This document shows positions 24,301 through 46,000 of a stretch of DNA of 64,000 nt, piece after piece. This DNA comes from Styela clava. Its lineage: Eukaryota. The stretch is taken from contig NC_135257.1 of NCBI RefSeq assembly GCF_964204865.1, forward strand, positions 11,842,001-11,906,000, given 5' to 3'. Position numbers and translations under genes: made by a program. The notes beneath the pieces are model-generated. The model had not been told where the DNA came from and did no database searches. It saw nothing but the letters and a program-made list of their open reading frames with translations. How positions within the stretch are numbered: the first letter of the stretch is position 1; the number at the start of each line of letters is the position of its first letter.

Positions 24301-27300
24301 AATTATACATACCGGTACTGGTATTTGTCCCTTGCGGGTGCTCCCCTATCCTGGCCCGCGAATATCCTTATGTTTGTGATTTTTGCCACCGGTCAATCAA
24401 CTTAGGGAACCACTGCCTTATAACTACTACTCACTACAGAAAATTTAGTTAACACTGTCATTTTCATAGATAGTAATAAAATGATGAGCACATGTTAAAA
24501 TGCAATTTGGCTGATCCTGGTTTTTCTAATGATTTAAAACTTAAACTACAATCCAATTACATTTCTTATCAAGACTTTTTTTCTGAACTGATTAAAATTA
24601 ACAAAATAATTAATTTTGGTATGAACTATTCTCCTACCTCCTCGCATACCCCTGACTGTTTGCATATTTACGTGTAGATTTCAGTCCCAAAGATATTTAC
24701 CACTTTATGTTTAACTGAATGTAATCTTGATTAATATATCTCTACAGCTTGCTGAACTTCTCCTCATGAATGGTGCTGATATAATTGGTATAGACAGCAG
24801 ATTAAACATGCCACTACATGTTGCAGCTACTTATGGACAAACTAAAGTTGCTGAAGTTTTACTACGGTACGGTAGTCCTGTGAATATATCAAATATGAAA
24901 AACTGTACTCCTTTGCATTATGCTTCATCAGAAGGTGCAGTCTCTATGGTAAGATTACTTCTAAAACATGGAGGAAATCCAAAAGCAAAAGACGGTGCGG
25001 GAAGCACACCAACAGACTTGGCAAAATCGGAACATGTGTTGGAAGTTTTTCTAGAACACGCAGTAAATAATCCAGATGAAGATGAAGTATTTAGCGGTGA
25101 AGATACAGACGCTAATAGCAAAACACTAAATCAAACAGGGCCTCCTAAACCAGCAAGAACTTTTGCTTTATCTTCTTCTGCACTGAAAGGTAGCTTTGTG
25201 AAAAGAGAAAGATCGCATTCACAGGAAATGACATTGGAACCAAAGAGTTCTCAATTGGAAAAATCGAACACTTACAGTAATTTTGGTCACTGGAAAAGAA
25301 ATCGAAAACTTAAAGAAACAAGCGAACAATCAAAAGTAATTGAACAAGCTGAAAATGAACGCAATGACACCGCACACTCAAAATTCCGCAGAACAAAGTC
25401 AACTCCAACGCGAAAGAAGCGAGCAAAACATCAACACCAGATTACTCTAAATGACAACACGCACAGACAAGTTGAAAGATCGATGACTCAGTATGCTATT
25501 GGTAGAAAAATACCTCGTCAGCAAGAAAACATTGCGCAGGAAAAATCTGTAATGAAACCTACAATAGAAAAGAGTAATCAAGACAAAAAATCAGTGACAA
25601 ATTTCAGACGAACAAAATCAACTCCTATCAGAAAGAAGCAAGGAGAGAATACTCAAAACGACAACACGCATAGAAAAGTTGACAGATCATTAACACAATA
25701 TTCTAAAAGTGAAAAAATACCGAAGAAAGAAGAAATCGAACAGGAAAAAGTTGTAAAAAGCCCTATAATGGAAAAGAGTAGTCAAGATGACAAACCAGTG
25801 ACTAATTTTAGACGTACAAAGTCAACTCCCATTAAAAAGAAGCATCGCCATCAAAGAACAAAACCTCAAATCAAGCCCATTAAAGGGACCGTTATACGAG
25901 CAAATTCAGTGCAAATGAAAACACACGAGCCGCTTGAAGTCAAACGCATGTATTCTGTAAGATATGCCAACAATCATTCAAAAAATATGAAAAAACTGCT
26001 AAGTGTATCAGAAGAAGACTTGCCAAAAGTTCACAGGAGATCAAAAAGCGTTCCATCACTATCAAATGAAAATAACAAACAAAACTGTTCTTTCAAAAAC
26101 GAAAAAACCAAGGACCAAACAAAGACAGAGAAAAACAAACCTATTCAATCAGAAACAAACATTGAATCTTCTAGCGCATCAGACACAAGTCAAAATGAAG
26201 TAAAAATCCAAATACATAAACAGAATTATTCCCACTCATTGCAGGATTTGACGGTCATCACAGAGGAGTCGCAGAACGGTGATACCGTAAGAGATGCCAA
26301 TTATAATTTCAAACCAAAACGAAAGGCAAACCGAACGATGTCCGACAGATTTTCAAATCGATTGAACAATATAAAAAATAGTTTTGTAAAGCGAAATCAG
26401 CATAAAAAATTTATAAAACAATAAGCAATTGATTTTTTATATATTTCCCCATTTTTATACATATGTTCATAATTTTTATTTTTTATGGCTTCTAAAAGAC
26501 AAGTTGCAATTTCATTTTAAAAATGTTGTAGATGTACAGGAGTCTTCAATCAACTTTCAGTCAACAAACTAAGTTTCGATTATTTTTAGAGAATCTCTCG
26601 ATTTTCAATTCGACCTCGTAAAATCTAATTTTAGCTATTAAAAACTCTTACAATAAAATTATACATTAAAAAATTAGAAAAAAATAAATAAATTGGCTTA
26701 AATTCTGAATTTGCAAGTAATTCCATATTTTTATGGTTGAGTGTTGAAATGACAAGACTATAAAATTTCAAAATTAGTTTGATCTGTTCATAATGAAATA
26801 GCCAGTGTGTTCCCATTTCATCTAAATTGCTTTGCCTGTTTACAACAACATTTGTCTATGAACTATCCCTCAAAATCATATCTAGCCTAGCGCTACTTTC
26901 CAACTTTAAATATTGTTTATTACTTCGTATATTTTTTGCAATTTTTTCAAGTGTCCTTTTTTCTTCATTTAAGACAGCAATACTTGATAATACACTCACA
27001 TTCCATAAATGTCTTTTGTGTAAGCGAGGTGGAAAGACAGGTAGGTCAAAACACAGATGTTGAGAAGGATATCATCACAAGTTTATGACCTTTAAGGGCA
27101 CAGGACTTTATATAGGTAATTTACGCAATAAAGCAGATTTGAGTTAGCAGAACCTTTTGAGTTATTCAAGTAAAAAAAATCTGGAAATTGATAATCATAA
27201 TATATAAAATTTTTGTAAGTCTCTACTATAGCACCACCTGACTTCATTACCACGTTTGCAACGAATATTTTTGAAGGAACAGAAAAGATTTTTCTAGTCA

Positions 27301-30300
27301 AAGAATTAAATTTTTTCATTAGTAGGCTATTTGTAAGTTGACAACCAAGGCTTTTGTAGCGGATATTCCTTTCACTCCAAACATAGGCTAGAAAGCATCT
27401 CCGCAGTAGGAGCATAATAAAGAACAATTGCGCAACAGGGGAAATAGCAAGCTGCTATGTGATAAGTAGTCACATTCGGTAGTGTGCTCTTGCCTGCAAA
27501 AGTTATCTCCTATACAGGTCAAATTACACCCGTGGGATAAGCTTACCTACCCCTAGTTGATAACCTACACTATGCCAATCAGTCACACAATCATTCACAA
27601 TTTACAGTAACAGTTGATGGAAGTAACCATTTACATACCTTAAAAGAACTGAAGCTTTCTCAGCTAGCGTCATGTCAGTCGCATTTCTTGATGCATGTTG
27701 GATCGCAACCAATAGAGGTCGAACAGCTTCTAAGATAAGACAGTCAGAATCGACAACATCATGTTCCTGTGAATGTCTCCTATTTGCCATGATTTCAATC
27801 AGATCGAGACAACGTAGTTGAAAGACCAGTAACTGCTTGTGAGAATCTTGCTCAACTTTTCGTTTGGATAGCTTTGAGAAAAGAAATGAAAAAATACAAT
27901 CAATGCATATCCTTATCCTGAATTATCCAAATTTTGCCTTTTACAAGACAAAATAATAAAAAACAAACTTATTATTTTAAAATGGATTTCTGCAGAACCA
28001 AATATTTATCTCTCCATGTTTTGTATTGGTGGATCCGTATGCACATAATGCAAGGTTGCTGGAGCAAGAGTGAAAATCTCTATTTAGAGTGATTCAAGAG
28101 CCTTACTTAAGCCTTCAAGAGAACTACTTATCCCTCTGAAACGTATTCATTTTAACGTGCATTCACTGTCACATAGACAGTCGTAAACGAGATAAAGTCA
28201 TAAGTTCACGCAATCGCAAATCTTAATTGTTTCTAAACCTTGAGAATGGGATTGGAAAAGTTGTTGTTGAATGATCCTTGCTTTTAGCATCTGTGAGGTA
28301 GATCTTTGTCACAGAGCTACATCATAGGTAATAATTGATTGTATGAGTTATCACCAGTCGAGAACTTGGCAAAGATTTACCAACATGAGCCCAAAAAGTT
28401 TGCGAAACCCTGATTTAGACTCATTATTTGCATCTAAACTGCATGTCAACAAAAACAAACATTGTTGTATCTGCCTGTATGTCCCTATCTGTACAGTATA
28501 AGAGACCAGTTTACCATAACAAAATATGTCATCCAACCTTTTTCTGTCTGAATACTTCAGCCAATACATTATCAATTCTCATCATTGCTTCATCATCCAT
28601 TTCAGGGCCAGAATCAGATTCTTCTTCATCATTGTTTTCTGCTTCCTGTTCTTCCTATATTGAATTAGACGATTTATGTACAATTTGTCAGTTGAAATAA
28701 ATACCGGCCAATCTTTCTGACATTCTACAAGAGAGTGGCACGACAGAAATCTGCGAGGTTGGCAATCAATAAGCTTGAGGCAAAACACGTTCTCGCTCTG
28801 TTGAAGACAGTCTGAAAAACACTTTCCAGAGAAGTTTTGACACTCGACTGGCATCAAATCATATGAGGCCCAGATAACAGTACCCAACTATTAAATGGTG
28901 TCCGAACAGCTGTACCCGGAAAGCAGCGCCCAAAACGGGGCACCTAATACTACCATTCCACTTTATCAATAACTTAGCATTTCTACATGTTTCACTATGT
29001 AACATGGTACCTATATATTATGTACCGGTAATAGTAAATCCATCAGCGCAAGTGACTAATTGAGATGCTAAGGGTATAAAATTCAAATAAATTCCAAAAA
29101 AGGAAAATATGTGAGAAAAGCCCATATTACAAAGATAACTGAAAAATTTGGATCTCTCTTATAAAAAGCAAAGAGAAAGCTACCATCTAACCGATAAACA
29201 ACACTTTACTTTTTTCATTGATTGGCTATTCATAAAGACGGATAATAAGAAATGTAGTCTATCCACTTTACCTCCGATGACACTGCAGCATCACCGAGTG
29301 CTTGTTTGACTTCTTTTCTGAATTTACCGTCATCATCTACTTCATCTTCTTTTATTTCATCTGAAACATCTTCATCGTTGAATGCAGAATCTCCAGAATC
29401 ACTTGATTCCTCATCTTCATCTTGAAATGAATGATAACAGTAGAAAATAAAAAATAAAAAATGAGTTACACAAATTAACAGTTTTTTTAATAATGAAAGG
29501 CAAAATACAAATTGGAAGATGTCTTAGTAACATATATACCAGGGGTGGGTAATTACTTCCAGAGTGGGCCAGTGTACAACGCACACCTATTGTACCAATT
29601 GGCACAATGATCAATGGGGCTGATGTAGACTACTGTAGGCGTGCAAAGGCTTGTTTAAATCAGGCTCGAAGCATCTTGTGATGATTCCTTATACCTACTG
29701 CTGTTTGCTTGAAGGGTTCGGGAAGATATTTGGTTTTTGCTTCTGTCAATTTGAATTATTTCGGAATAATAATTCAAATGCGTGAGTTTGAGGTATATGT
29801 GGCTCTTTTGGCACATTATCTTCGAGTGTCAATAATACCTAGGAATTACAGTATTTATTCGAGCCAACGATTTTTTTTATTTTATCTATATTTTCAACAG
29901 AATACCATGTCCTTAAATTTCAGCAGGCAAAAGTGGGCTGAATGAAACACTTCAGTGGGCTGGAACTGGCCCATCGGTCATAATTTGCCCGTCCCTGATA
30001 TTGACAAACTAGGGTTCGGTGCATGTGGTTGGCCCCAGCCCTTAGTTCACCACCGGTTGAATGCCTTCCCTTTGCAACAGGCTTTGGGGCGCTGAATAAA
30101 TCTGTCTCAATAGACAAAATTACAATACCATATACATGTACCATATTTGAATTTATTTTATTTATAAATCTAATGTATTTGTAAATTTGCTTTGTGCTGC
30201 CAATACATGCCCACTTTGCAGTACATCTTGCATAATCGTTAAAGGTAGAAATGGCATAAAGAACTGGCATTCAGTGTGAGCTGAGTTGTCATCAGTAATA

Positions 30301-33300
30301 TGACAATAGATATCATCATTATACCAGTATTATTGTGAAGTAGGAATCAAACAAAGTGACTAGGCCTATTCAAAAAGTCCACACATTGATGGCCTTCCAT
30401 GATCTGAACCAGGGCTCTTCAAACTGGGGTGTGACGCGATAGGGGTCGCATTTATATATGCAAGCACAGTTTATTCACAAGAGCTAGTCCAACACCTAGG
30501 CTAATAATGATATAATAATCAGAAGCACAATGTAACAATTGGGGGCATTATTTATATCCATAAAAAGCATAGTAGTAATTTCAGCAGACAAAAGTGGGCC
30601 AGATGAAACACTTTGGTGGGCCGGATCCGGCTCGCTGGCCGTAATTTGCCCACCCCTGAACTAGGGCATTCTACTGGAGGAAGATATCGGTTCATCTAGA
30701 AGTCTTATAGCAAAGCAGCTCCTTTATTAGACAATAACTTGAATAAGTAAAACAAGTTGTCTCTAAATATGGCAATATGTGACATTCCCAAATCAATTGA
30801 AAGTAGATGAGAAAAGTCTGGATTTCAGCCATAAATTCAGCAATTTATAATACCTTCCATTTCATCATTGTCATCATCTTCGTTACTCCCATCGTCGTCC
30901 TCAGCATTATCTTCATCAAGTAAAATGTTCTTTTTTCGGTCTGGGTCTAACACCTGAACAATCACCTCAAATTTATAAATTGTCTGATCCAGGAGGTCCC
31001 CAACCCACAATGCATGATTCTAAATCAGGGGTCTGCAAGCAGAGAAGTGCCAATTTTGAATGGTGTGCCCGCGAAGCAAGTTTTTAGTTTAGTTAATCTG
31101 GTATGTGCGAGCAATTCTAATCCTTTTGCATCGCAATGCCTATAGCCTGAGTGCCACTGTCATATTAGCAAAACAGGCTAGTAAAATTCTGTTGCAAAAA
31201 CGTGTTTCTCGCTGAATTCGTTTAAAGTCAGTGTAACAATAAATTTGAATAGCAGTTTTCTTCAGAAATTTATGCGTTTAACTCATCATTTCTGCATAGA
31301 CCTCTAATAATGTTGTAAGATCAATATCGAATATAAACAATTTTTTTGTGCCAGCAACTACTAGAAAGGCTATCTTAAATAAATGTGCTGCCCGTGGCTT
31401 CACCCAGTAACTTGTATCTGTCTCTCCAGTAATAAAGGTTGCACCCCACTGCTCTGAAGCATACAGATGATGGTATATCACATTTTCTGAACAATTTCTG
31501 CAGTAAATATAACATATTGGAATTCCTAAAAAAATGATATTTCGATGTCCATATCAAAATAGATTTGTCCATATCAAACCAGAAATAACCATCCTGATGC
31601 ATTAAATTTAAGTTAATACAAAATTGTATAAGTCACAAAATGTGAAATCTCACAAATGAAACAGCAATACCATAACACTTACATCAAGTATCGAATGAAG
31701 ACCTTTTCTTGTGAGTTGTATGCTTAATAATTTGAACACTTGATCAGCAACAGATCTTATGCTGTGTGAATTTTGTGATAACATACTTAGTATAGTCTCA
31801 ATGATAACCTGGTGAATATAAAGTAGAACAGAAAAGTTAACATCAATCATTTATTATCTTTGAAATATTTAAAAAACAATAAGCTCAGATCAAAACAGAA
31901 ATTTTACCACAGGTCAAAAAGGGCTTCTAACAGGTCATAAAAAAAAATTAGACAATATTTACTTTTTTCTACAAAAAACAATGCATTTTCAATATTTCCA
32001 TTTCGGTTAAAATTATAAAATCTGATCAGAAATTTACCTCCACCCACGTAACTTCAGACGAATTGTCATCATATGCTGAAACAAAAAAATGATCCACATT
32101 TATGTGATAGGTTTAGGAAAAAAGACAATGAGTAAAAATAAGTTAGAAAGTTTGTTCAATCAGAAATAATCAACAAATTAACTAAAAGACCTCAGTGAAT
32201 GTGTGAAGAAATACTAACATTGTCATTTAACATCGTGACGAAGGTAATCAATAAATGAAATAAATAAAAATATATTACCAATTTACCATAAAGTTAAACA
32301 ACTATCATTATAACGAGTTGAATAGCATAGACCAAGGGTGTGCGGAATGTGGCCAGCAAGCCAAATGCGAGTTATGCGACCCACAAGGAAAAATTGTGCG
32401 GCCCGCGGGAAGTGCCAATTTGGAATCGTGTACGACCCGCGAAACGAGTTTTTAATTTAGTTTAATCTGGTATGTGCGACTAACTCCTACCCCTTTGCAT
32501 TACGAAGCCTATACCTGAGTCCAATTATTATCTATGCCTATGACGTTTTATTGCCCCAAATTCACGCACCTGTAACAAGTAGGAAGCCTGTGTTAAATAA
32601 AGGTGCGGCCCGCGGTTCTACCCAGTTATTTGCATCTGGCCCTTCTTTATTGAAGGTTGCACACCCCTGGCAAAGACTTAAAATACTGAAGTCCTAGATG
32701 CATGCTATGGTTTTTTATGATAAATTTCAATTCTGTGATCAAAATCAATATTCACCTTCAACATTTCCATCTCCAAAACGTTCATCAACAACTTGAAACA
32801 AATCAGTCAAAACTTCACGAGCACTAGCACTTTCCTCAACAGTTGTATTGAGAAGTTTGATTCCAATATGAGCAAGTAACAATCGAAGAGCTGTACCCTC
32901 TGTTTTTCTGGGTTCATCTTTTTCTAGATAGTGAATATTTTCAGGAAAGGTAACAAAATACAAAACGAGAATATCGGTCGGAGACCGAAGACTTATCGAT
33001 AAAACTGCGGTTTTGATTCATGACTCTATAGTGACACCGGGTGTCCCATCGTTAATTATACACCATAATTCATCCAAAATTCATAGGCTTATGGTCCGAG
33101 ATATGATGAATGCACATGCAAAATTTGGAGCAGATTCAACCTCGCCTTCGTGAGATATCGCGTCTATCCAACAGACAAACAAACAGACTGACAGACAGAC
33201 AAATACCTATCAACATACTTACCGATCTTAAGATCGATAAGTAACAATTATATATAATCAAGGATAAAAGGATACAAGGAGATTATGGACCCACAAATTA

Positions 33301-36300
33301 TATTTTTTTTTACAAGAAAAAAAATGTTATATATGCTAGCTATGATGGTTGTAAAAATGCTAAACACGATGAAATATACTTCATGATAAAGCAATTGTAA
33401 AAGTTAATGCTATCAATATTGTGAAACACACAAAAACCTAGTTTTGAAATCAAAAAAGTTCTTCCAAGATCTATTTAAAAAAAAGGTAACTCAACTATCT
33501 CAAACTCACTTAACTCTTGACATTCAACTCTTGAATCTCAACAGAGCAACAGAACTATAATGGTGTTTTATATACAGATAACAAATAATGGGCTTTTTTC
33601 ATCTGGCAAATGGACAAATGATATCATTGAAAGATGTTTTGAGTCGTCTGCTCCAAAAAAATCACTTTAAAAAAAAATGGAAATATTCACTCACCAGTAT
33701 CTGCTAATTTGGTCAATATCAAATCCATACCAAACAAAAATATTTCGTATGATGGCCAAATAACCCATTTCTAATTTCTAAATATGTCACTGTAATTATT
33801 CGAAGATGAATAAAGTGTCAGAAATAGCATGACTGAGACATGATATTAATATACCTTCAATTTTTAATATTTGTTCTATTTTTTCAATCATGTTTTTCCA
33901 CATTAGTTGGCATGTATCGTCCATCGATGTGATCAATCTTGCTTTGTGTTTCAACAGCAATTCATTAGTGAATTTGATCAGTTTGTAAATAAAGAATTCT
34001 CCATTACTATCTGTCCCATTGAATCTGTGCTTTGAAGAAGCCTACACAAGAATATATGAGAGTTTGACAAAAGAGAGAAGAAAAGCAGGTTAAAAAATAG
34101 TCAGCATGGCATGTTTACAAAAATGGCAAACACTAGCACACTTTTATTGTGGCATATTTATGCTTATGTATATTTATTTGATTTACTTTTCATAGGTTTA
34201 AATCATGTGGAGAAAAAAATTTGCGAAAGGGTTGATGGACTCCTCACCATTGTAGGGTGGTTGATGAGTGCCCATAATTTAGTGTTTCATCAGATGTCCT
34301 GCTCTAAATAACTGTTAAAGGTAGAAATGGCATTAAGGACTGGCATTCAGTGTGAGCTGAGTTGTCATCAGTAATATGACAATAGATATCATCATCATGC
34401 CAGTATTTATGTGAAGTAGGAATCAAACAAAGTGACTATTTAAAAAGGTCACACATGGATGGCATTTGATAATCTAAACCAGAGCTCTTCAAACTGGGGT
34501 GGGATGCAAAAAAGTTCAATGGGGGTCGCGTTTATGTATGCAAGCACATCGGTGTTATTAAGATATTATCAATTTGATTTTTGATATTTTCTGAATTATC
34601 AAATATCTTCCGTTTGAGTTCCTGATAGTCACGAAATAAATTGGCCTTGCCAAGTGGGTGATGAAAACAGTTTGGAGAACACTGATCTAAACCTTGCTGA
34701 GCAAACCTGTATAGCTCTGCATTAAATACCGGCAACTAGCAGCCGTGTCAAAGTTTTATCGAGAAGGCAAATCAGAAAACAAGCAAAAAGATGCATAACC
34801 GAAGTACTGCAAGACAAGTGACCCAAACAATAGTGCAAATGGAGCCAGTACACTACCACACTCTACACATCCAACCACACAAGCAATTACATACATGTCC
34901 TTCAACAATAAAATACTTACCCCAATCTGTAGGGAAGGCATACTGTTTATTGCATTCAGTGCAGGATCAAGACAATGTTTGAGATGCTCTCGAGTCTTTC
35001 CAGTTATTGGAACAAAAGATTCATCCATACCAGATAGATCAGGAAGTTTTCCCGCTTTTATACTGCAAACTGTCAAGTAAAAAAGATAACTTTACAAAAA
35101 GGCAAAAACTAACATATGGTACAGTACTTTGAATATGAGGTAATTGTACTTGTGTATATTTGATTTTCATGCATGGATTCATAGGTTTGAATATTATATG
35201 TGAGAAGGTTGATGGACTCCTCATCGCTGTAGAGTGGTTCACAAAACAAAAGGTTAAGGCTAGAAATGGTATAAGAGACTGGCATTCAGTGTGAGCTGAG
35301 TTGTCATCAATAATATGACAATAGATATCATCATCATGCCAGTATTTATGTGAAGTAGGAGTCAAAACAAATTGACTATTTGAAAAGTCCACACATCGTC
35401 ATGGGTGGCATTCCATGATATAAACCAGGGCTCTTCAAACTGGGGTGGAATGCGAAAGGGCTCGATGAGGGTCGCATTTATATCTGCAAGCACATCAGTC
35501 TCATTAAGGTATTATCAATTTTATTTTTATTCATATTTTCTGTATTATTGAATTTAGAATTTTTTTATTTGAGTTCCTTATACTAGAGATAAAAAATTGG
35601 CCTTGCCAAATGGGTCGTGATGAAAAGAGTTTGAAGAACACTGATCTAAACCTTGCTGAGCAAGACACCAAATAGAACTTTATTTTAAATGGCGACAATT
35701 GGAGCAAAAAAGATAATTCAGTACAATCTTTTTAAACAAAGTTACAACCTTTTACGCCACAGATGGGCGCTTTGAAAGTATTTGAACCAAGATGACAGAC
35801 AACCTGAACAACCCTAGCCTGGTACATATACTATGTTCAGGTTGTGCGCCATCCTGGTACAATACTTCCCACAGATGGTTGTAGAAAATGTTTGAAATTG
35901 ATTTTGCTGATTTTGATTTTTGCTAGGTGACTTTTTCATGTTTTCAATTTGTTTCTAAAACTATTAAGCAAGGCAAAATGGGAAATATGAAAATTATTGA
36001 TTTTAAACTAGAACGTGGCTAAATTTTGTTTGGAGGGAACAGTGAATTTATACAATAATACCGGTAATATTAAATATTTTTAACATGATTTTTGCTTAGT
36101 GACTTTTTCATGTTTTAATTTATTTCTAAACTTATTAAGAAACACTAACTTGGAAATAGCAAAATTCATGATTTCAAACTAGAATGAAGCTAAATTTTGT
36201 GTGAAAGAAACAGTGAATTTACACATTAATATTATTAAATATGATTGATACATGACTTAAACAAAAAACACTGTTCACAGTTGTGTATCGCAACAAACTT

Positions 36301-39300
36301 TAGTTTTTGAATTAAGTAACAAACGATGAATATCAAAATGGGACTATATCCCCAAAAAGCCAGGACTTACCGTCAAAATGATAATGAAGAAACAAAAACT
36401 TGAAAGCTGAGAAAACCCATCCATCCTTTCTTGGTAAACGAGAGTTACGTATAAGATGTGATAACTGAGTCATACCCCATCTAAATTAATAATATTAATG
36501 AATTTATTATCTATGAAAATTTAATGAAGCACAGGAAAACTAGTAGATGTGATAGCCTGGGGTTAAAGCGTTAGACTTAGCTGTGTTGGTTTCGGCTCAC
36601 CTCACCCAGAGTGAAATAAATTTAGTAGGAAATGCCGAACTGGAAAAATATGGTTCTTTTAAAATATACTAGCTCCTCACATATTGTCAGATATCAGTGG
36701 CCAGCTTTTACAGCGCCTTGTTTAGAGTAAAAGGTGTGAAACTGGTTTAAACTGGTTTAAACAGGTTGAACTACAAACCTTCTTGCAGTATCCAAAGTGA
36801 CTTCCTTAATTCCTTCATAATCAAGTTTCCCCGACATGAAAACCTTTTTCAACCATTCAATATACTTCTCTACAGCATCGACATGAAGAGATCCTGATAC
36901 AGATTGTAAACACCGTGTATTGGTGTTTTCATCCAAGAATAAACCTGCAGGACTGAAAAATGTTGCTTTTTACTTGATGTTCTAGGCTTACGATTCACAT
37001 TGCTGCTTTAAATTCTATACTTAGGCTTTTGAATTCTCAATATGAACTGATATTAACCTGCTTTTCTTTGCAGAAATAGATTTATACATAGTCAGTTTTC
37101 AGCAAATAATTTGATATTTGTTTTCAGCAATTTTTAAGCAAAGCCTTGTGACTCAGCCTTAAACTGGTCCATATTAGCGGTGAGCCAGACTCTGACTCAA
37201 ATATGAATGAAAGCATGTCAAACTCTTGACTCCTCAGTCCTGTATAATTAATAATTATGTATATGTTACAAAAGAATCCAGGAAATGGAATTCTTTTTCA
37301 GTCAAAGCCCAAGAACTTACCTGGTTAATAACTGGAAAAGCACAGTAAGTTGCTTCTTCATAGTCATTTTTTCATCTTTGATTTTTTCTGATAATTCATC
37401 AATAATTTCTGTTTTGCATACCGCATGTAAAGGATTTGTTTTATTCACCAAAACATAAAACAAACTCGTAACTAATCGAGTGGACCATACTGTAGAAACC
37501 TAGAAAAGATTAAAAAAATTGCGGTACAACAAAAATGTGATAAGATAAATATAGAATTGGGCCAAAATCAGGCTCATGTGTTGGTTCATATTGCGGAAGT
37601 ACGCAAAATCATAATTTTCAAATATTTTTCACTGCTTCGGTGTGGCCATAAAAGCATCACAACATATACTGTTCGTGAGCAGTGGTGTTTAATCAAAGCT
37701 AGCATAAATCTAAAGTGTAATAGCATTCTGTTGCTATATACTTTTAAAATCATGTGTAAAGATTTATACAACAGTTAAGAGTTTCCCACAACTGGCATCC
37801 ATTACACAATCTGATGCATGAAGGAAACACTAAATTATCATAGTATAACTTCTCTTAATCTCTTTAAATCATTGCCTAATATTATTGCTCACTTTTGTTT
37901 AATTTTTATATAGAATTTACTCTGGGTGTGGCAAAAAAAACTTGATAGTTTATTGATCGCTGATGGACTCCTCAACTTGTAGGATGGTTCATGAGTTCCC
38001 GTACTCGCATGTAACTGGAGGATAGACTAATAATTAGCTAAAAAAAAAGTTCCAATCAAAAGAACTCAATATAGAGATTAGAGAAAAATTAATTGCTCAA
38101 ATTAAAACGGAGAAGCGAAAGATCTCAGTAAGACATCCTAAGACTGTATCACACACAAGATTTTTTTTCCATTAGATGTCTAGCTCTGCTTGAAGTAGAA
38201 ATGGCCTAAAGAACTGGCATTCAGTGTGAGCTGAGTTGTCATCAGTAATATGACAATAGATATCATCATCATGCCAGTATTAATGTGAAGTAGGAGTCAA
38301 ACAAAGTGACTAGGCCTATTCAAAACGCCCACACATGGATGGCATTCGCATTCCATGATCTCAATCAGAGCTCTCTAAACGATCGTTTATTTTCTATATT
38401 TATGTCAAGATAAAACTTATAAATTAACATTTAATCACCTGGTCTTCTCGAACTAATGGAAGAGTGAATATCGACAATTTGAAAGCTAAGTATTTTCTTT
38501 CAGGTGATGAATCGAGCAAACCATCATCGATAGATTCTTTCCAAAATTTTTTGAATGTTTCTGTGTCAGACTTCACAACATTTTCTATAACTTCATAACA
38601 CAATGGATGAATCCTAGGATGACATTGTGTGGTTGAAGAAAACATCTTTCCAAGATATTTGTAACTGTGAGAACCTGTCCAAAAGAAGTTATCAGTCAAT
38701 CTGAGATAACCACTGGTACAATTTCAGAATATGAGATATTTATCTCTAATATAGGAAAGTCAGCAAGATGGCCTGATCATCTGGCAAACCACAGTCTCAT
38801 GTAGGATTGCCGGTCGAGGGGATGTGTGGGAATAGATAACCAGTTGATCGTCACTGATTGATAACCCCTAGATAGTGGAAGAAGCTAAAAGCTACCAAGT
38901 GGCATGTACACGATTTACCCTATAAAAGCAAAGACGCAAACAAACGCCTTGTATGATAGTCATCTAAACGCACACACTTGTACGGTGCTACTCATCACTG
39001 TTATAACAACGATTGATTCGCCGATGATCAGCAGTTGAGATAAAAACAAAATATTCTAATTACCGTATTTGGTCGTTTTGTAGCCCGGGCCCATATTTTT
39101 TTCAACCAACTGACTAACCGGGCCTTATTCAAGCACAGGCGCTTGTTATTTTCAATCGTTACAATAATTAATACATTGTTATTTCCAGTCTTCAAGTATG
39201 ATTTAAACGAGAATAACGAAAATTTAGACTTTTTCTACACACCGCAGGTACAAATCCGCAGAAGAAGAAAAGCTTTGCGACGCCCTATTAATACTGAAAC

Positions 39301-42300
39301 GGCTCACTTGAGCGCCGCGCGCCCAGTTTGAGAACCATGGTGTTACGTAATCAATGCTATCTGTTATGTACTTGGACGCCTAAGGGGTGAGTGTTATCTA
39401 CCGGCGCTCAAAATTCAACAGCGTTGTGACAAAATCGCTTCTTATTTCCTATTGTTATCTACTACTGGAAAATCAGCTGTTACATGGGGCGGGTATTCAA
39501 GTACCGGCCCTTATTTATTTTCATGTTCTGTTCACACGGGCAGCTATTCAAACGAGCCCTCAATCAAGATCGGGCGGTAAAACGAGCATATACGGTACTT
39601 TATTATTCAAATCTACATTTCACCAGCAAAGCAAGTAATGAAAAAAAATCTAGCTGCAATAATCTTTTATAGCTGCTTGTAGTGATAAATAAATTACCGT
39701 ACATAGTTTCATAATGCACTGGTATAAAATGCATTTGAAATATTTTCATCAATGTCAGATCGAAACCCATAATTTAATTGCTGGCTCCCGACTCCTGCTC
39801 GCTTGCCCGTTTGATCAGTAGATGTGAGATTAATCAAGAGTGTGAAAAACAAAGAAATTACCTATAAGCTCAACCTTCTTGGACTTTTGACTAATCCATT
39901 TATTTGCTTTAAGAAAAGATTTTCCACAGGTTTCTGATTGGTAGTTGCAACAAGACTGCAAAACTTCAAATATTTCTGCATCGCATTTTTCCCATCCATC
40001 CCCTAGTAACTGACTGAGTGAATCCCATATGACTGAATCAAATATGTCATTTGAAACCTGCAAAATAGTGGTGGGAATAACTGAGAGCAGAACTTACAAG
40101 CGAAATCAACGCTTATTAATGAAATTAGATGGGATGAATGAAGATGAATTTTAGCCAGTAGGCGTATTTATTAGTTGTTTCGACCTGTGAAAGCTGAACA
40201 GTATTTCAAGTTGTAGGGGTACTCGTTGTAGGGGTATCGGAAGAATTTCCTTAAAAACATTAGTTATAAAATGAAAAAAAGTTCTAAAACTAACGTCTTT
40301 TTCTGAAATTGTAAGTAATCAGGGATATATACCGTAAATCAAGAAATGAGAGATTCCAAACATTCAATACATCAAGTCATTGATAGTTTATGCATCTTAA
40401 AATGGAGCAAAGCTACTAATTGTATCAAACTTATTCAGTTGCTTTGAGATTGCATCTCTTTAATAATTACCAAAAGTTTCAGAGGTCGAATTTGTCCTGT
40501 GAGTAAGACCGAGGCGTGTATAATACTTGTAGATAATATTGTAGAGTTTGCCTGAGATACTAACTAGCTTAGGTAAACTCTAAGATAAACAAATAAATAT
40601 AGATGCAGTTTCATATCACTTGAAAGGAATATATAAATTAGATATATCTCTATGTACCTTCTGTATTAATTCTTTCATTCCATGAAAACAGATCTGCCTC
40701 AAATATGATTTGAAATTGCTGTATTTCATCAGTCCATCAAACACAGTTTTAACAGACTTGGGAGCTTTTTCAAGTTTGCATGACTGGATAACGGCTAGGT
40801 AAGCAAACACCTTTCCCAGAAGAATTCCTTTTTCACCCTGTGAAGAATGATGTCACAAACAAATTACTTTTCCATTTTCTACTCATATTAGTTGAAGTGG
40901 GAATACTAGATAGCCAAATGATCTGGGTATGTAGTGTATACAATGGCGCGAAACATACCATGGTAGTGCTCGTATTACAGACCTGTGATAATTCAAACAT
41001 ACAAATAGCCAAAAGCCAAAACAGCACCCAGGTCATTTGGAGCATATACAATGAGAAATATAAATTTTGTGCATCCTTCGTGTTCGAGCTTCAAATTAAA
41101 AATTTTCGTTATTGTAGAAGTAATCAAGAAATTTATAAATTTTAAGTTGTCTACTATAACAAGTGCTAATAGATGCATAGCTTCATTAATAAACCGTGAT
41201 ACCTAACAGATCCAAATGATGAAATACACAATTCTGAGTTGATAGTATTTACATTCATAAAGAGAATGAGTATTTTATAGTTTCTTACATCATCAAGAGT
41301 GAAACGTTAAAAGCATAACGATTTGGTGACTAACAACAGAAAATAACTTTTCTCTGGCCAAGTTTATAGCTGGATAAGGTGGTACTGAATCGCAATAGTA
41401 ACTGTCAGAAACCGCTACAGAAATGGGTACTCCTGTAGTATGTGTACCAGGTTAGGGTTAGGCCATAATTTTATCCCGATTTCCTTATTTTAGTTTTATT
41501 ACAAGTTCGGGGACTGTCTGTGTTAGCCAAGTGAATTTTCCCCCCTGCCCATAGGTTTCAGTCGCTATACACAACTTGATGTAAAATAGGCGAACAAAAT
41601 TAGTTGCCTCCGTATTGGTACACATACTTCTGGAGCGCCCAGAAGTGTCATACTATTACAAAAAAATGTCATATCTCTTATGTCTTATGATAGCTATACA
41701 CTCTGTAAAATTTATTATATGTATTCTTACACTCCCATCCTTAGATGATTTCAGATTTTCTTCAACTAATTTTAGGACTTTTTGAATTGTTGGATCATCC
41801 TTAACTTCGAGTTTTTTAAGAAGATGAGTGAGTGCACAAGAAAATCCAAGCCGAGAAGCTTTTCTCTCAGATGCAAGTCCATGAATTAATCTCCCTATTG
41901 CATATTTAACATCAGCACACCAAATATTGTCCACGTCATCCTTGGAATAGTAAAAAATATATTATATATTTGTTTTATACAATTCTTATACGCACGTTTC
42001 GCTTTGAACGAGGCAGCCACTGATATCTAACAATGTGTAAAAAGCTCCTCTTTTGATTTGGAATCATCTCTGATAAGATTTATTGGTTGCTGAAACATAT
42101 ATGAATCCAAGTGTTCATCAAAATCAAAACTGTGTGATAGCGGAAATAATTTATGTGAAACGGTAATTGATAATGAAATAATGGTTTGAAATAACAAGCA
42201 ATACAGAAATAATTGTAGAACTCGTTATGCGTAGATGTTCATTTAAGATCATTTATGGATTTTCCGAAAAACCAAGTCACCAGTCAGCTCTATGCATAAG

Positions 42301-43025
42301 TCATTATATACTGAAGTATGCATTATGTATAATGGTACCGGTAATAAAAACATGTGGACAAATATTGAAATTGGAGTGTTCACAGGTTTCCCGTACCTTT
42401 TAAACTAAATTTGCAGTGGGCAAAAACTGGCGAAAAGTTTAATGTACTAAGCAACTAAGCCTATTCATAAATATTTACTGAAAAACTTACATCAGGGACA
42501 ACGTGACGGTTTTGACGTTCTAACAAAATCAGAACAATCTTTTCGGATGCTGAAATTCTTGTTTTGTCGTCGGGAGTTGAAAGCTTCCAAAATAAAGTCA
42601 AAATTTCGTCTCTATCTGACTTGTCGGGCTTCATACTTCCATTCGACAGTTTCAACCCACAGCTTATCGATAAAAAATTTGGTAATTCTGTTACGGTATG
42701 TTGATAATCGAAATTTTGCTTCTTTTTTAATCCTCTTACAGCCTTGGTCTTACAAACTTAGTTAACGGTACGGTATCTCTCGGGGCTTCGGCTAAATCCG
42801 AACCAACAATACCAGAGCGAAGAACCTTCAATGCCTTGAGCTTCGAAGTGTGACACCACACGTGGAATCGAAAATTCTGGTAATACTAACAACATTGCCA
42901 AAAGTTTTTACTCGTGTTCAAGTGTAAAAATATGATAAGAATTTGAATTTTTGCGAATAATTTGCAACAAAGTCTTACATACATTTAGCAGACAGAATAC
43001 ATCGTTAGTGTACGATACTCACCAT
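9316..43025 (-). CDS. MYBBP1A: Myb-binding protein 1A (Pol5/DNA pol phi family nucleolar protein), multi-exon
   Basis: Phase-consistent exons, 5'->3': [43025-43023 ATG-only, tentative], 42748(or ATG 42634)-42491, 41940-41731, 40837-40658, 40057-39862, 38674-38439, 37499-37321, 36952-36779, 36480-36371, 35069-34921, 34041-33855, 32923-32756, 32075-32038, 31808-31683, 30953-30854, 29420-29272, 28654-28538, 27871-27639, 14979-14791, 14100-13972, 13383-13308, 11372-11206, 10720-10553, 10051-9945, 9796-9680, 9401-9316(TAG). Motifs: LFWKLS..DDKTR..A, KYAIGRLIHGLASERKASRLGFSCAL, HPRIHP, WVEVIIETILSMLSQ, an acidic tract, MDDEAMMRIDNVLAEVF and a Lys-rich C-terminus. Confidence 0.9.
11710..13293. mobile_element. 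Foldback (palindromic) non-coding element of 1.58 kb
   Basis: 11710-12526 is the reverse complement of 12547-13293 apart from indels, with a ~20-bp spacer. The A-rich tract is mirrored by a T-rich tract, and the subterminal motif GGCCCATCGTTGTCA is repeated. Flanked by AATAAC on both sides. Confidence 0.85.
13588..13811 (-). mobile_element. tRNA-derived SINE
   Basis: Pol III B-box GGTTCGAATCCC on the minus strand (13740-13729) with an A-box-like head and a non-tRNA body. Related body fragments occur at ~34228, ~35203 and ~37958. Confidence 0.7.
15483..15699. mobile_element. Merlin-like MITE copy with a degenerate left end
   Basis: Aligns by eye with the 8298-8752 and 41426-41639 family and ends in gggagtacc. 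Confidence 0.7.
19417..19621. mobile_element. Merlin-like MITE
   Basis: Termini ggtactcc...ggagcgct. Perfect 8-bp TSD CATATTTT. Confidence 0.8.
22377..26424 (+). CDS. Ankyrin-repeat protein with a long disordered C-terminus, nested antisense in a MYBBP1A intron
   Basis: Exons 22377-22467, 22852-22931, 23365-23511, 23950-24042 and 24748-26424(TAA) are in phase. Ankyrin motifs: YPIHIAASHG, TALHQASRFGH, PLHVAATYGQ, TPLHYASSEG, GADPN/GANPD. Confidence 0.85.
24173..24415. mobile_element. Degenerate hAT-like MITE
   Basis: Termini gagtggttcccaaac and gggaaccactg, with ggcccg subterminal motifs. TSD is poorly preserved. Confidence 0.55.
29540..29997. mobile_element. hAT MITE
   Basis: Termini CAGGGGTGGGTAA and TTTGCCCGTCCCTG. 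TSD ATATATAC/ATATTGAC. A second 3'-end fragment lies at ~30578-30658. Confidence 0.65.
30263..30328 (-). ncRNA. Box C/D snoRNA candidate, copy 1 (predicted guide for the 28S Am equivalent to yeast Am2946; SNORD29/snR71-type target)
   Basis: Sense to the MYBBP1A intron. 8-bp terminal stem with one G-U pair, C box ATGATGA, internal hairpin, guide AACTCAGCTCAC, D box CTGA. Confidence 0.75.
32333..32669. mobile_element. hAT MITE
   Basis: Termini CAAGGGTGTGC and GCACACCCCTG, with GGCCCGCG subterminal repeats. TSD GCATAGAC/GCAAAGAC. Related fragments at ~2570-2700 and ~31026-31150. Confidence 0.75.
32963..33244 (-). mobile_element. Helentron-associated non-autonomous element (HINE/DINE-1-like)
   Basis: subTIRs ACTTATCGAT (32991-33000) and ATCGATAAGT (33233-33242), adjacent partial inverted repeat (33217-33228), (GACA)n microsatellite, and terminal hairpin TCGGTC-GGA-GACCGA (32974-32988). 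Confidence 0.65.
34339..34404 (-). ncRNA. Box C/D snoRNA candidate, copy 2
   Basis: Minus strand reads ACTGGCAT G ATGATGA TATCTA TTGTCAT ATTACTG ATGACAA CTCAGCTCACA CTGA ATGCCAGT, with a perfect 8-bp stem. Confidence 0.8.
34480..34684. mobile_element. hAT MITE adjacent to snoRNA copy 2
   Basis: Termini CAGAGCTCTTCAAAC and GTTTGGAGAACACTG. Perfect TSD ATCTAAAC. Confidence 0.75.
35278..35343 (-). ncRNA. Box C/D snoRNA candidate, copy 3
   Basis: Identical to copy 2 except for one substitution in the internal hairpin loop. Confidence 0.8.
35426..35643. mobile_element. hAT MITE adjacent to snoRNA copy 3 (same insertion as 34480-34684)
   Basis: Same termini. TSD ATATAAAC/ATCTAAAC and the same downstream flank CTTGCTGAGCAA. 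Confidence 0.75.
35766..35869. mobile_element. Short degenerate Merlin-like MITE
   Basis: Eroded TIR (ggcgct..aagta..aaccaagatg). Flanked by the direct repeat CACAGATG. Confidence 0.55.
35914..36242. repeat. Diverged tandem duplication with a ~165-bp unit (2 copies)
   Basis: 35914-36077 and 36086-36242 share tgatttttgct..gtgacttttt..aaactagaa..gctaaattttg..aacagtgaattta. Confidence 0.75.
38213..38278 (-). ncRNA. Box C/D snoRNA candidate, copy 4
   Basis: Core identical to copy 2, located in MYBBP1A intron 38438-37500. Confidence 0.8.
39063..39595. mobile_element. Tc1/mariner-type non-autonomous element
   Basis: TA|CCGTATTTGGTCGTTTT ... AAAACGAGCATATACGG|TA: imperfect TIRs with a TA TSD. Confidence 0.65.
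41426..41639. mobile_element. Merlin-like MITE
   Basis: Termini ggtactcc...ggagcgcc. TSD CAGAAATG/CAGAAGTG. Confidence 0.8.
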
Positions 43026-43686: not shown

Positions 43687-46000
43687 TTATTGTAGCGATA
43701 CGCAACATCCTACGCTGTAGTCGTAGAACTTGTCACGTATCGCGAGCTTGTGGGCGTTATAAATACGTTCGAGGTCTCTTTCTTCAGCAACTGTGTCGAA
43801 ATCTCGCACATAGATACGTACCTGAAGAAAGGGAAAAAAATTATCAACTCAATTAGTATGTACAGACATATCTTATATATATTCAATATTCTAACGTACT
43901 TGTCATCAAATTCGACTGGGGTTTAATTCCTACAATTCAATCGGTGAAGATGTAGACAAAACAGAAACTAAGTGAACTGCCCAGAATTTACTACCTCGGA
44001 TTCTCAAGACCCCGCAAACCTAAAATTAAAACCTAAATTCAGTTTAAATCCATTTTAACGGACTGGCTAATATTCATTTGTTATGGAGGGTGAATTTTCT
44101 TTTGTATAATGACATGTCTCGTATCGGTAATATTGGCTATTATATTATCCATAACGCCACTGAATAAGAATTCAAATTTACTAAACCCAAAACTGATCAA
44201 TTTTAGACTAACATGCTTATCTTGTATTTATAAAAATAGGAAAAGTCTTACTTTTAGTGTATCCACTGAGCATTTATCATTTTCTCTTAAAATTACAAGT
44301 TTTTCGATAAATTTCGTTGATATGAAGGCGTTTATCTTCAAATAGTACAATGATTTGCAGTGCTCAATTAATGCTAGAAATTGGCTATCGAACACCTCGT
44401 AAGTATCCGGTAGATCTGAAATTTAAACAAAGTGTAACAAAAAAAAAATCATTTTTTCTAAAATCATAAAAACTCAATGCAAAAAAGATGCACAGAATTG
44501 TTGTGTACCAAGTGTAATCTTTTCCAATGTGTTACTGTAATGAGGCAGTATGGTTGAAATTGTAGGTCCGATTTGCCAATCTTGTTCAGCAAAGTAGCAT
44601 CCATCAAATGTAATCTAAAATGATAACGAAATAAAAGTGTGAAGTTAAATATATTCATGCATAATCAATCAATTTACGCGCACGTGAATAATGAAACGTG
44701 CCAAAAAACAAAGTCAGCTTTGTATTTGTTCATACGATGGGAACCATTTGTGATAGAATACAAGGGGCATGATGGGAACAGTTTTTCGATAAAATACAAT
44801 GGAGATGATCTTGCTTCCAAACTGGCTTTTTCTTTCATTCAGTTTCAGATTCATTTCGCTGTTTCTTACCTGTCTTAGCGGTATCTGCGGGCATAAAATT
44901 CGAAAATGTTCTTCTGAGCTCATGACACGTTCAAATTTCATATCAACTTTACAGTTGGGACATTTATTTCGAAGGGCGCTCCAAAATTGTCCCTGAATAA
45001 TTTGGTAATGAGGATCGTAAGCGTGTACTTTGATGTGTAGCCGTTTTAGTGAATCATGAGAAATGTGTTCCGCTAAAGTTTCCAAAAAATCTTCCGAAAT
45101 ATAACTGTAGTTGATGAACAAATCTCGCAGATTCTTGAACTGTCGCATGCAGTCGACAAATTCTGTAAACAGAAAGATGGGTCTTCTGTTGAAAAAGAAG
45201 TCTTCCAAATCCAAGTATGTCACGGTATCACCCATTTCATATCCAAGTGAAAACAAAACTTTGTACCCATCATTCAAGCACATTTTTGCACTTCTTAAGT
45301 TGACTCTTTCTAAAGTATGCTGACCTTTGCAAAAATACTTTGCAAGCCATGTGGTGAAGTCTTCTTGAATGGAGTTCCATTGTCCACGATCTAGCTGTAG
45401 TCCTGGAATGGAGAGTTCTTCCAGTCTCGCCTTTTCTTTTATGAGAGTGATGAAACATACTCGAATAGCCCTTTGAAACTTGCGACAGACACTCGATAAT
45501 GCGGGATTATATAATCGAAATTCCAAACGACGTAGATATTTTCCAAATATTCGGACATATTGAGTAGCATTTCGATAAGGAAGGTGCGTCGAATCTCTTG
45601 GATCACGCCCTGAAAACCTAAATGACTTGACACGCCACAAATTTCCCGTGTGCCTCATCACTGTATACCATCTCTTGCAAACGTACATTGCACTCGGGCG
45701 ATGCCTTTCTGCAAGGTGAACAAAAATGTGCTCTAATATCACGTGAGGAACAGTCGCCCATCCGTGAGGATTGTCTTCATTCGATAAATCGTCGATGGAA
45801 GTCATAGATTTTGACAACGTTTTGCCTGTTCCGTCTGACATGAGACTTCCTATATCAAAGTTATTAGAGTTCCGTCTCGTTTTGGCCGACGTAGCACTTT
45901 TGCTTGAATCCAATTTTAATTTTTCTGAGTTTGATTCAATTGTTTTTAATTTCGGTTTTTTCGGCGGTACGGGACCATCTTCTTCCTCGAATTGTATCAT
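43687..46000 (-). CDS. FBXO39: F-box only protein 39-like (F-box + LRR-like)
   Basis: Exons 46000-44870, 44614-44509, 44415-44252 and 43821-43687(TAA). F-box WATVPHVILEHIF...VCKRW, plus YVRIFGKYL, IKVHAYDPH, FERVM and a C-terminal RIY..EE..L..IY, matching the remembered vertebrate FBXO39 along its length. Confidence 0.85.

What the first reader, a model, noticed from the sequence alone, without database searches (positions are those of the whole stretch)
30263..38278. Four-copy intronic box C/D snoRNA family in MYBBP1A targeting the 28S peptidyl-transferase region
Seen: a 66-nt unit sits once each in four different introns, sense to the host (30263, 34339, 35278, 38213). It has an 8-bp terminal stem, C box ATGATGA, an internal TTGTCAT/ATGACAA hairpin, a guide and D box CTGA. 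The only differences among copies are a stem change retaining a G-U pair, the base before the C box and a loop base, while the flanks diverge much more, suggesting purifying selection. Established: the conserved LSU sequence GUGAGCUGGGUU pairs with the guide AACUCAGCUCAC (12 bp, one G-U). The D+5 rule points to the A of GUG-A-GC, the site methylated via yeast snR71 (Am2946) and vertebrate SNORD29. Inference: an unusually compact guide using the D box (as I recall, SNORD29 uses D'), amplified within a gene that itself acts in large-subunit biogenesis.
Basis: partly seen in the sequence, partly recalled or inferred. Interest (0 to 1): 0.8.

Follow-up and report, generated by a model that had tools for sequence, protein, structure and literature searches.

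The report
Six-copy intronic box C/D snoRNA family
A small guide RNA gene sits in four introns of a sea-squirt ribosome-assembly gene and twice in a second gene, and is built to direct a well-known, very old methyl mark on large-subunit rRNA; it is a sound new annotation of an ordinary kind.

Summary
Four 66-nt units lie on the minus strand at 30263-30328, 34339-34404, 35278-35343 and 38213-38278. Each has a C box, a D box, an 8-bp terminal stem with K-turn spacing and an internal hairpin. They differ at only 3 of 66 columns; their flanks differ at 45 of 122 (p=2e-7).

The host is a DNA_pol_phi (MYBBP1A/Pol5) gene. RNA contigs give GT..AG introns that hold copies 2, 3 and 4 in sense; the intron of copy 1 is inferred.

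The guide pairs over 12 bp (one G-U) with a single site in the species' own 28S. D+5 falls on A3246. Guide and register match the Rfam consensus of yeast snR71 and of SNORD29, but there the guide precedes D', here D.

New here: the genome has six copies. Two more lie in a SAFB-like gene on contig C13, alike only within the 66-67-nt unit, with one compensatory stem change. The family is not a dispersed repeat, and no other guide for this site was found.

Verdict: a real, probably functional equivalent of SNORD29/snR71, new member of a known kind. The scan has unchecked notes of other multi-copy intronic snoRNAs in this genome.

The parts
30263..30328 (-). snoRNA copy 1. Its stem has a U-G wobble at unit position 6 and an A before the C box.
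   Evidence: CM 96.8 bits. The intron position is inferred from the flanking open frames at about 30840-31019 and 29270-29430.
34339..34404 (-). snoRNA copy 2, the reference copy. 5' stem arm 34397-34404; C box AUGAUGA 34389-34395; hairpin arms 34376-34382 and 34362-34368; overlapping CUGAUGA (D'/C') 34365-34371; guide AACUCAGCUCAC 34352-34363; D box CUGA 34347-34350; 3' stem arm 34339-34346.
   Evidence: CM 100.5 bits. It lies in intron 34041-34919, 298 nt from the 3' splice site.
35278..35343 (-). snoRNA copy 3. The putative D' box CUGA reads UUGA.
   Evidence: It lies in intron 35070-36370, 208 nt from the 3' splice site.
38213..38278 (-). snoRNA copy 4, identical to copy 2.
   Evidence: It lies in intron 37498-38436, 158 nt from the 5' splice site and 715 nt from the 3' splice site.
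30232..30468 (-). Duplicated intronic cassette around copy 1.
   Evidence: blastn self-comparison: 81-89% identity to the other cassettes.
34308..34548 (-). Cassette around copy 2. Together with copy 3 the shared stretch extends to 34704.
   Evidence: The stretch 34537-34691 just upstream is a dispersed repeat with more than 30 genomic copies at about 70% identity.
35253..35494 (-). Cassette around copy 3. It shares 411 nt with the copy 2 region (35253-35663).
38195..38380 (-). Cassette around copy 4.
27600..42655 (-). Host gene, DNA_pol_phi family (MYBBP1A/Pol5), approximate span. Exons confirmed by RNA contigs: 33855-34040, 34920-35069, 36371-36480, 36779-36952, 37321-37497, 38437-38676.
   Evidence: Exon-by-exon Pfam hits are colinear with PF04931 positions 1-52, 67-124, 204-275, 337-388 and 579-622. 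Spliced contigs in four runs show CT..AC on the + strand, which is GT..AG on the minus strand.

Best explanation
The 66-nt units are genes for an intron-encoded box C/D snoRNA. Shown: the anatomy, the copy number, the intron position of three copies, and the fit of the guide to the species' own 28S. Inferred: each unit is released from the spliced host intron by debranching and exonuclease trimming. The 8-bp terminal stem and the C/D K-turn then assemble the Snu13/Nop56/Nop58/fibrillarin snoRNP. The 12-nt guide just upstream of box D pairs with 28S GUGAGCUGGGUU, and fibrillarin 2'-O-methylates the nucleotide opposite the fifth guide position, A3246 in this species' LSU numbering. That is the site guided by snR71 in yeast and by SNORD29/U29 in human and plants. 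The 5' half (C box to the internal CUGAUGA) has no convincing target. It appears to act as a spacer closed by a conserved GUCAU/AUGAC hairpin in place of a canonical C'/D' motif. Four copies arose by DNA-level duplication of a 190-250-nt intronic cassette within the MYBBP1A-like gene. Two older paralogues sit in a SAFB-like gene. All six keep boxes, stem and guide under purifying selection.
For: Anatomy: AUGAUGA and CUGA boxes, an 8-bp stem, a 3-nt bulge before GAUGA and the D box abutting the stem. Specificity: no other C..D pair in the window has a stem longer than 4 bp. Selection within the cassette: 3 of 66 variable columns in the unit against 45 of 122 in the flanks, Fisher p=2e-7. Paralogues on C13 are alike only within the 66-67-nt unit, with no flank similarity. 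Their last 31 nt (C' box, guide, D box, stem) are identical, and one stem pair changes from C-G to U-A. Target: a unique 12-bp duplex (11 Watson-Crick plus 1 G-U) in the genome's own LSU, with D+5 on A3246; 12 of 1000 shuffled guides reach 12 bp. Same target as the known guides: the Rfam consensus of snR71 (CUCAGCUCAC, 1 nt, box) and of SNORD29 (CUAGCUCAC, 1 nt, box) has the same register. PMC3511168 lists AtU29 Am2936, U29 Am4493 and snR71 Am2943 as one conserved site. Host: a DNA_pol_phi gene, expressed and spliced, with copies 2-4 in sense inside GT..AG introns. Census: only six copies by BLAST and by a covariance model. No other guide for the site was found.
Against: No direct evidence of a stable 66-nt RNA. 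The four laid runs (guessed to be RNA) are kept as contigs and show only low-depth intron pieces at the copies. No methylation data exist. No Rfam family reaches its cut-off; the best are generic C/D models at 20-25 bits, and snR71 scores 16.8 against a cut-off of 60. The D' and C' boxes overlap (CUGAUGA), so a canonical C'/D' K-loop cannot form. The copies lie 208-715 nt from the 3' splice site. From memory, this is far from the roughly 70-nt optimum described for mammalian intronic C/D snoRNAs. Structural covariation is thin: one compensatory pair, not above the shuffle control. Conservation in other species could not be tested.
Confidence: 0.8

Rival explanations
1. The units are inert relics: snoRNA-derived pseudogenes or cargo of a repeat cassette. 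They would be kept alike by recent duplication or gene conversion, not by function.
For: Each window copy sits inside a longer duplicated cassette next to relics of dispersed repeats. No small RNA was seen. No Rfam family is matched.
Against: The flanks have drifted to 74-85% identity while the unit stays at 97.7%, and its three changes avoid the boxes and the guide. The C13 paralogues keep only the unit, with an intact stem through a compensatory change. There are only six copies, all in sense inside introns of two expressed-type nuclear genes, and none is dispersed.
Confidence: 0.07
2. It is a real, stable C/D snoRNP, but its main role is not methylation of A3246. Possible roles are pre-rRNA folding or chaperoning at the peptidyl-transferase region, a target of the 5' half, or regulation of the host pre-mRNA.
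For: The conserved GUCAUAU block in the 5' half is unexplained by any rRNA target. A 12-bp duplex could also serve a chaperone role.
Against: The guide register is exactly that of the known methylation guides for this site. The distance from the conserved block to the internal CUGA varies between paralogues, so no fixed D' target exists. The best D' duplexes are 8-10 bp and rich in G-U.
Confidence: 0.08
3. Only some of the six copies are expressed, for example those in the SAFB-like gene or those nearest a splice site. The others are silent passengers.
For: The distances to the 3' splice site vary from 208 to 715 nt. Copy 3 has a mutated internal CUGA.
Against: All copies keep intact C and D boxes, stem and guide. 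Copies 2 and 4 are identical, so reads cannot tell them apart.
Confidence: 0.3

Closest known systems
Yeast snR71 (Rfam RF00479, clan CL00051)
   Same: It is a box C/D guide with the guide core CUCAGCUCAC, including the same U that makes the G-U pair, followed by one nucleotide and then the box. It therefore selects the same target adenosine (site listed in PMC3511168).
   Different: In snR71 the guide follows the C box and precedes D'. Here it follows C' and precedes D. The snR71 model has 97 positions against 66 nt here. The CM score is 16.8 bits against a cut-off of 60. By my own knowledge, snR71 is an independently transcribed gene in yeast, whereas this RNA is intronic.
Vertebrate/plant SNORD29 (U29, Rfam RF00070)
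   Same: The size is the same (65-position model), the target site is the same, and the guide CUAGCUCAC plus one nucleotide plus box has the same register. It is also intron-encoded.
   Different: The guide lies upstream of D', not D. By my own knowledge, its vertebrate host is the non-coding SNHG1/UHG gene, whereas the hosts here are the protein-coding MYBBP1A-like and SAFB-like genes. RF00070 finds nothing at these loci; its best genomic hits (up to 25.7 bits) are elsewhere and lack the guide.
Multi-copy intronic snoRNA paralogues within one host gene, and snoRNA movement between introns and genes
   Same: There are several near-identical copies, one per intron, in sense. [quoted passage not shown] PMC5824354 notes that the position of the antisense element occasionally shifts between D' and D.
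   Different: Here the duplicated unit is a 190-250-nt cassette, not the bare snoRNA. Tunicate snoRNAs are largely uncatalogued (PMC5006418).

Membership tests
Box C/D snoRNA (2'-O-methylation guide) | C box RUGAUGA near the 5' end and D box CUGA near the 3' end | tested here: met
   AUGAUGA and CUGA are invariant in all six copies.
Box C/D snoRNA (2'-O-methylation guide) | Terminal stem that brings C and D together with K-turn spacing | tested here: met
   An 8-bp stem, a 3-nt bulge before GAUGA, and the D box abutting the stem. One G-U change and one compensatory C-G to U-A change. Background stems in the window are 4 bp or less.
Box C/D snoRNA (2'-O-methylation guide) | Guide of 10 bp or more, complementary to rRNA or snRNA and ending next to D or D', with the target opposite position 5 | tested here: met
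   A 12-bp unique duplex with the genome's own LSU; position 5 falls on A3246.
Box C/D snoRNA (2'-O-methylation guide) | Canonical internal C'/D' motif | tested here: not met
   CUGA and UGAUGA overlap as CUGAUGA. A Watson-Crick hairpin GUCAU/AUGAC is conserved instead. By general knowledge, degenerate C'/D' motifs are common in eukaryotes, so this does not exclude membership.
Box C/D snoRNA (2'-O-methylation guide) | Stable RNA of about 60-100 nt bound by fibrillarin, Nop56, Nop58 and Snu13 | not testable with these tools
   Only contigs of runs guessed to be RNA were available, and they cannot show ends or levels.
Box C/D snoRNA (2'-O-methylation guide) | Methylation present at the predicted nucleotide | not testable with these tools
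   No RiboMeth-seq data were at hand.
SNORD29/snR71 clan (Rfam CL00051) | Score at or above the gathering cut-off of RF00070 or RF00479 | tested here: not met
   RF00479 scores 16.8 bits against 60. RF00070 is not listed at E up to 10.
SNORD29/snR71 clan (Rfam CL00051) | Guides the LSU adenosine equivalent to yeast Am2943/2946 and human Am4493 | tested here: met
   Same guide core and register as both family consensus sequences; site table in PMC3511168.
SNORD29/snR71 clan (Rfam CL00051) | Guide placed between the C box and D' | tested here: not met
   Here the guide lies between C' and D.

The most novel reading that the evidence does not exclude
The Styela RNA does not descend from SNORD29/snR71. 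It is a lineage-specific replacement. The antisense element for this ancient methylation site was re-created on, or moved to, the D side of another C/D backbone after the ancestral gene was lost. The new guide was then amplified to six copies, as an intronic cassette within a 60S-assembly gene and into a second host, to secure dosage.
Probability: 0.3. Interest if true: 0.4.

Novelty: new member of a known kind. Interest (0 to 1): 0.3.

Why it matters
The finding gives tunicates, whose snoRNAs are barely catalogued (PMC5006418), a well-supported guide for one of the most conserved 2'-O-methylations near the peptidyl-transferase centre. Homology models miss this guide. The site and the guide sequence are kept from yeast to a chordate relative. 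The position of the guide (D against D'), the host gene and the copy number all change. That makes it a clean example of snoRNA turnover around a fixed target. It is useful for annotation and as a test case, but it would not surprise a specialist.

Tried and rejected
1. Rfam at gathering cut-offs found nothing in the window. With permissive E-values only generic C/D models appear at 20-25 bits.
2. RF00070 and RF00479 searched across the whole genome gave only sub-threshold hits that lack the guide.
3. The TE hypothesis: the unit and its near flanks occur only six and four times respectively. Only a stretch 133-285 nt upstream of copies 2 and 3 is a dispersed repeat.
4. A target for the D' side: the best duplexes are 8-10 bp, rich in G-U, and in a different register in each paralogue. 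Rejected.
5. Other snoRNAs in the host introns: none has a stem of 5 bp or more. The weak SNORD45-like, sR47-like and Me28S-like Rfam hits were not pursued.
6. Other guides for the same site: the pattern TGATGA..AGCTCACNNTGA gave the six copies plus four hits without stems, against three hits for the reversed-pattern control.
A metagenome scan for the 24-nt 3' core found nothing.
8. Expression: the one read-laying run returned contigs only. It confirmed splicing but cannot show a small RNA.
The large representative search was not used.
Full report
**Observation.**
Reading the minus strand at the four coordinates shows the same 66-nt unit each time. It reads ACUGGCAU-G-AUGAUGA-UAUCUAUUGUCAUAUUACUGAUGAC-AACUCAGCUCAC-A-CUGA-AUGCCAGU. 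A 49-nt core occurs four times with 0-1 mismatch, against none in 100 shuffles.

The copies differ at three columns only:
- Unit position 6, C>U in copy 1, which keeps a G-U pair in the stem.
- Position 9, G>A in copy 1, the base before the C box.
- Position 34, C>U in copy 3, in the hairpin loop and internal CUGA.

A simple scan for RUGAUGA...CUGA pairs over both strands of the 64-kb window finds 29 pairs. Only these four have a terminal stem of 5 bp or more. They have 8 bp; the rest have 4 or fewer.

**Surroundings.**
The units are not bare. Each lies in a duplicated cassette of 186-250 nt: about 140 nt upstream and about 30 nt downstream, at 81-89% identity. Copies 2 and 3 share 411 nt. Mean pairwise identity is 97.7% inside the unit, 82-85% upstream and 74% downstream. 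Variable columns number 3 of 66 in the unit and 45 of 122 in the flanks (Fisher p=2e-7).

The stretch 34537-34691, further upstream of copy 2, is a dispersed repeat with more than 30 genomic copies at about 70% identity in both orientations. The near flanks and the unit itself are not dispersed. That fits in part. The cassette is real, but the TE relic is only a neighbour of copies 2 and 3.

**Host gene.**
Open frames on the minus strand were searched exon by exon and never joined. They hit Pfam DNA_pol_phi (PF04931) colinearly, at profile positions 1-52, 67-124, 204-275, 337-388 and 579-622. That is the MYBBP1A/Pol5 family.

Contigs from four public runs in three studies were laid on 33700-38750; the tool only guesses these runs to be RNA. 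They give exons 33855-34040, 34920-35069, 36371-36480, 36779-36952, 37321-37497 and 38437-38676. The joints read CT..AC on the + strand, which is GT..AG on the minus strand.
- Copy 2 lies in intron 34041-34919, in sense.
- Copy 3 lies in intron 35070-36370, in sense.
- Copy 4 lies in intron 37498-38436, in sense.
- Copy 1 lies between open frames at about 30840-31019 and about 29270-29430. Its intron position is inferred.

The copies are 298, 208 and 715 nt from their 3' splice sites. The organism is given as Styela clava by an earlier follow-up note. I did not check that.

**Genome census.**
BLAST of the unit against the window's own assembly finds six copies. Four are here. Two more are on contig C13 at 17422711-17422777 and 17423744-17423809, both on the minus strand. 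A covariance model built from the six (R1) finds the same six at 85-100 bits; the next hit scores 24 bits.

The C13 copies lie on the sense strand of a gene with a SAP domain, an RRM and Arg/Glu-rich and Gly-rich exons, so it is SAFB-like. They sit between its exons.

Similarity between the C13 and C9 copies, and between the two C13 copies, stops at the ends of the 66-67-nt unit. There is no flank similarity at all. Inside the unit:
- The last 31 nt (CUGAUGACAACUCAGCUCACACUGAAUGCCA) are identical in all six.
- The C box is invariant.
- One stem pair is C-G in five copies and U-A in one.
- The 5' spacer varies in sequence and length, except for a GUCAUAU block that can pair with AUGAC.

The limits of conservation therefore coincide with the predicted mature RNA. 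This is the strongest indirect evidence for function available here. Covariation is thin, one compensatory pair, and does not exceed the shuffle control.

**Target.**
I located the genome's own rDNA and scanned LSU, SSU and 5.8S. The guide upstream of D forms one duplex of 12 bp (11 Watson-Crick plus 1 G-U) with LSU CGUGAGCUGGGUUUAGAC. The next best is 9 bp. The fifth guide nucleotide upstream of D pairs with A3246. Of 1000 shuffled guides, 12 reach 12 bp when any number of G-U pairs is allowed.

The Rfam consensus of snR71 reads ...AUGAUGAuAAcCUuACUCAGCUCACUCAGA.... That of SNORD29 reads ...UGAUGAAACUAACUAGCUCACUaUGA.... Both have the same guide core, then one nucleotide, then the box, so the +5 rule selects the same adenosine. 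PMC3511168 lists this as one conserved site: AtU29 Am2936, human U29 Am4493 and yeast snR71 Am2943, all in clan CL00051. From memory, current yeast numbering calls it Am2946, and the E. coli equivalent is about A2577 in domain V near the peptidyl-transferase centre.

In both known families the guide lies between the C box and D'. PMC5824354 says such shifts of the antisense element happen sporadically.

**Is it the only guide for this site?**
RF00070 and RF00479 searched over the whole assembly give only sub-threshold hits (30 bits or less) that lack the guide. The pattern TGATGA(2-32)AGCTCACNNTGA gives the six copies plus four hits. Those four have no terminal stem and look like coding sequence. 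The reversed-pattern control gives three hits. Within the limits of these searches, the family is the only candidate guide for A3246.

**The 5' half.**
The internal CUGA and UGAUGA overlap as CUGAUGA, so a canonical C'/D' K-loop cannot form. The predicted folds show the terminal stem plus a 7-bp hairpin UUGUCAU/AUGACAA. Its arms are kept in all six copies, fully in five and as 5 bp plus a mismatch in one. The loop is 7, 10 or 11 nt.

Duplexes of the putative D' guide with rRNA are 8-10 bp with many G-U pairs, and they fall in a different register in each paralogue. I read this half as a structural spacer.

**Mechanism.**
- Shown: the gene anatomy, the copy number, the intron position of three copies, host expression and splicing, the unique fit of the guide to the species' 28S, and its identity of register with known guides.
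- Inferred: release from the spliced intron, snoRNP assembly on the C/D K-turn, and methylation of A3246 by the fibrillarin copy at box D.

By my own knowledge of mammalian intronic snoRNAs, a long 8-bp stem would suit units that lie far from the 3' splice site.

**What is missing.**
The laid runs are kept as contigs. They show low-depth intron pieces that break inside the repeated unit, and no separate abundant snoRNA piece among those listed. This neither supports nor refutes a stable RNA.

Related ascidians could not be examined. A metagenome scan for the 24-nt 3' core was blank.

**Novelty.**
Several things here are known patterns:
- Multi-copy intronic snoRNAs in one host.
- Movement of snoRNAs between introns and between genes (PMC6984369).
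- Host genes tied to ribosome biogenesis.
- Occasional D/D' shifts of the antisense element (PMC5824354).

Tunicate snoRNAs are poorly catalogued, and homology searches miss most of them (PMC5006418). The scan has also noted other triplicated intronic C/D snoRNAs in this same genome (s1-822958, s1-829433; unchecked).

The finding is therefore a sound new member of a known kind: the functional equivalent of SNORD29/snR71 in a tunicate, not demonstrably its homologue. Interest 0.3.

Noticed in passing
window 35773-35870: A near-perfect 98-nt hairpin with a weak Rfam hit to the plant MIR169_6 model (E=0.027, far below the cut-off). RNA-run contigs pile up here to a summed depth of 2,200-14,800, with loose ends on both sides. 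It looks like a high-copy, transcribed, MITE-like inverted repeat inside the intron that also holds copy 3.
   Followed up: partly
G000:C13:17422711-17422777 and 17423744-17423809 (L017 8712-8778 and 9745-9810, minus strand): Two further paralogues of the snoRNA lie in a SAFB-like gene (SAP + RRM). They have their own spacer sequences and no flank similarity to the window copies.
   Followed up: yes
window 34537-34691 and 35500-35650: A relic of a dispersed repeat with more than 30 genomic copies at about 70% identity, in both orientations. It lies next to the cassettes of copies 2 and 3.
   Followed up: partly
window 29916-29998 and 30577-30659: Direct repeats of 83 nt (79.5% identity) flank the copy 1 cassette on both sides. 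They are probably two relics of another repeat family.
   Followed up: no
window 35914-36060 / 36086-36231 and 31044-31152 / 32409-32520: A tandem duplication of about 147 nt (82% identity) lies in the intron of copy 3. A 110-nt repeat (80% identity) is shared by two other host introns.
   Followed up: no
window 34040-34923: Run X7 joins 34042 to 34923 with one extra letter, where the other three runs join 34040 to 34920. This is a strain difference or an alternative acceptor three bases away.
   Followed up: no
window 24727-26424 (+) and 44714-46000 (-): Two long single-exon open frames flank the host gene: a 565-aa frame with an ankyrin-like start and Lys/Ser-rich repeats, and a 428-aa frame. 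Neither was examined.
   Followed up: no
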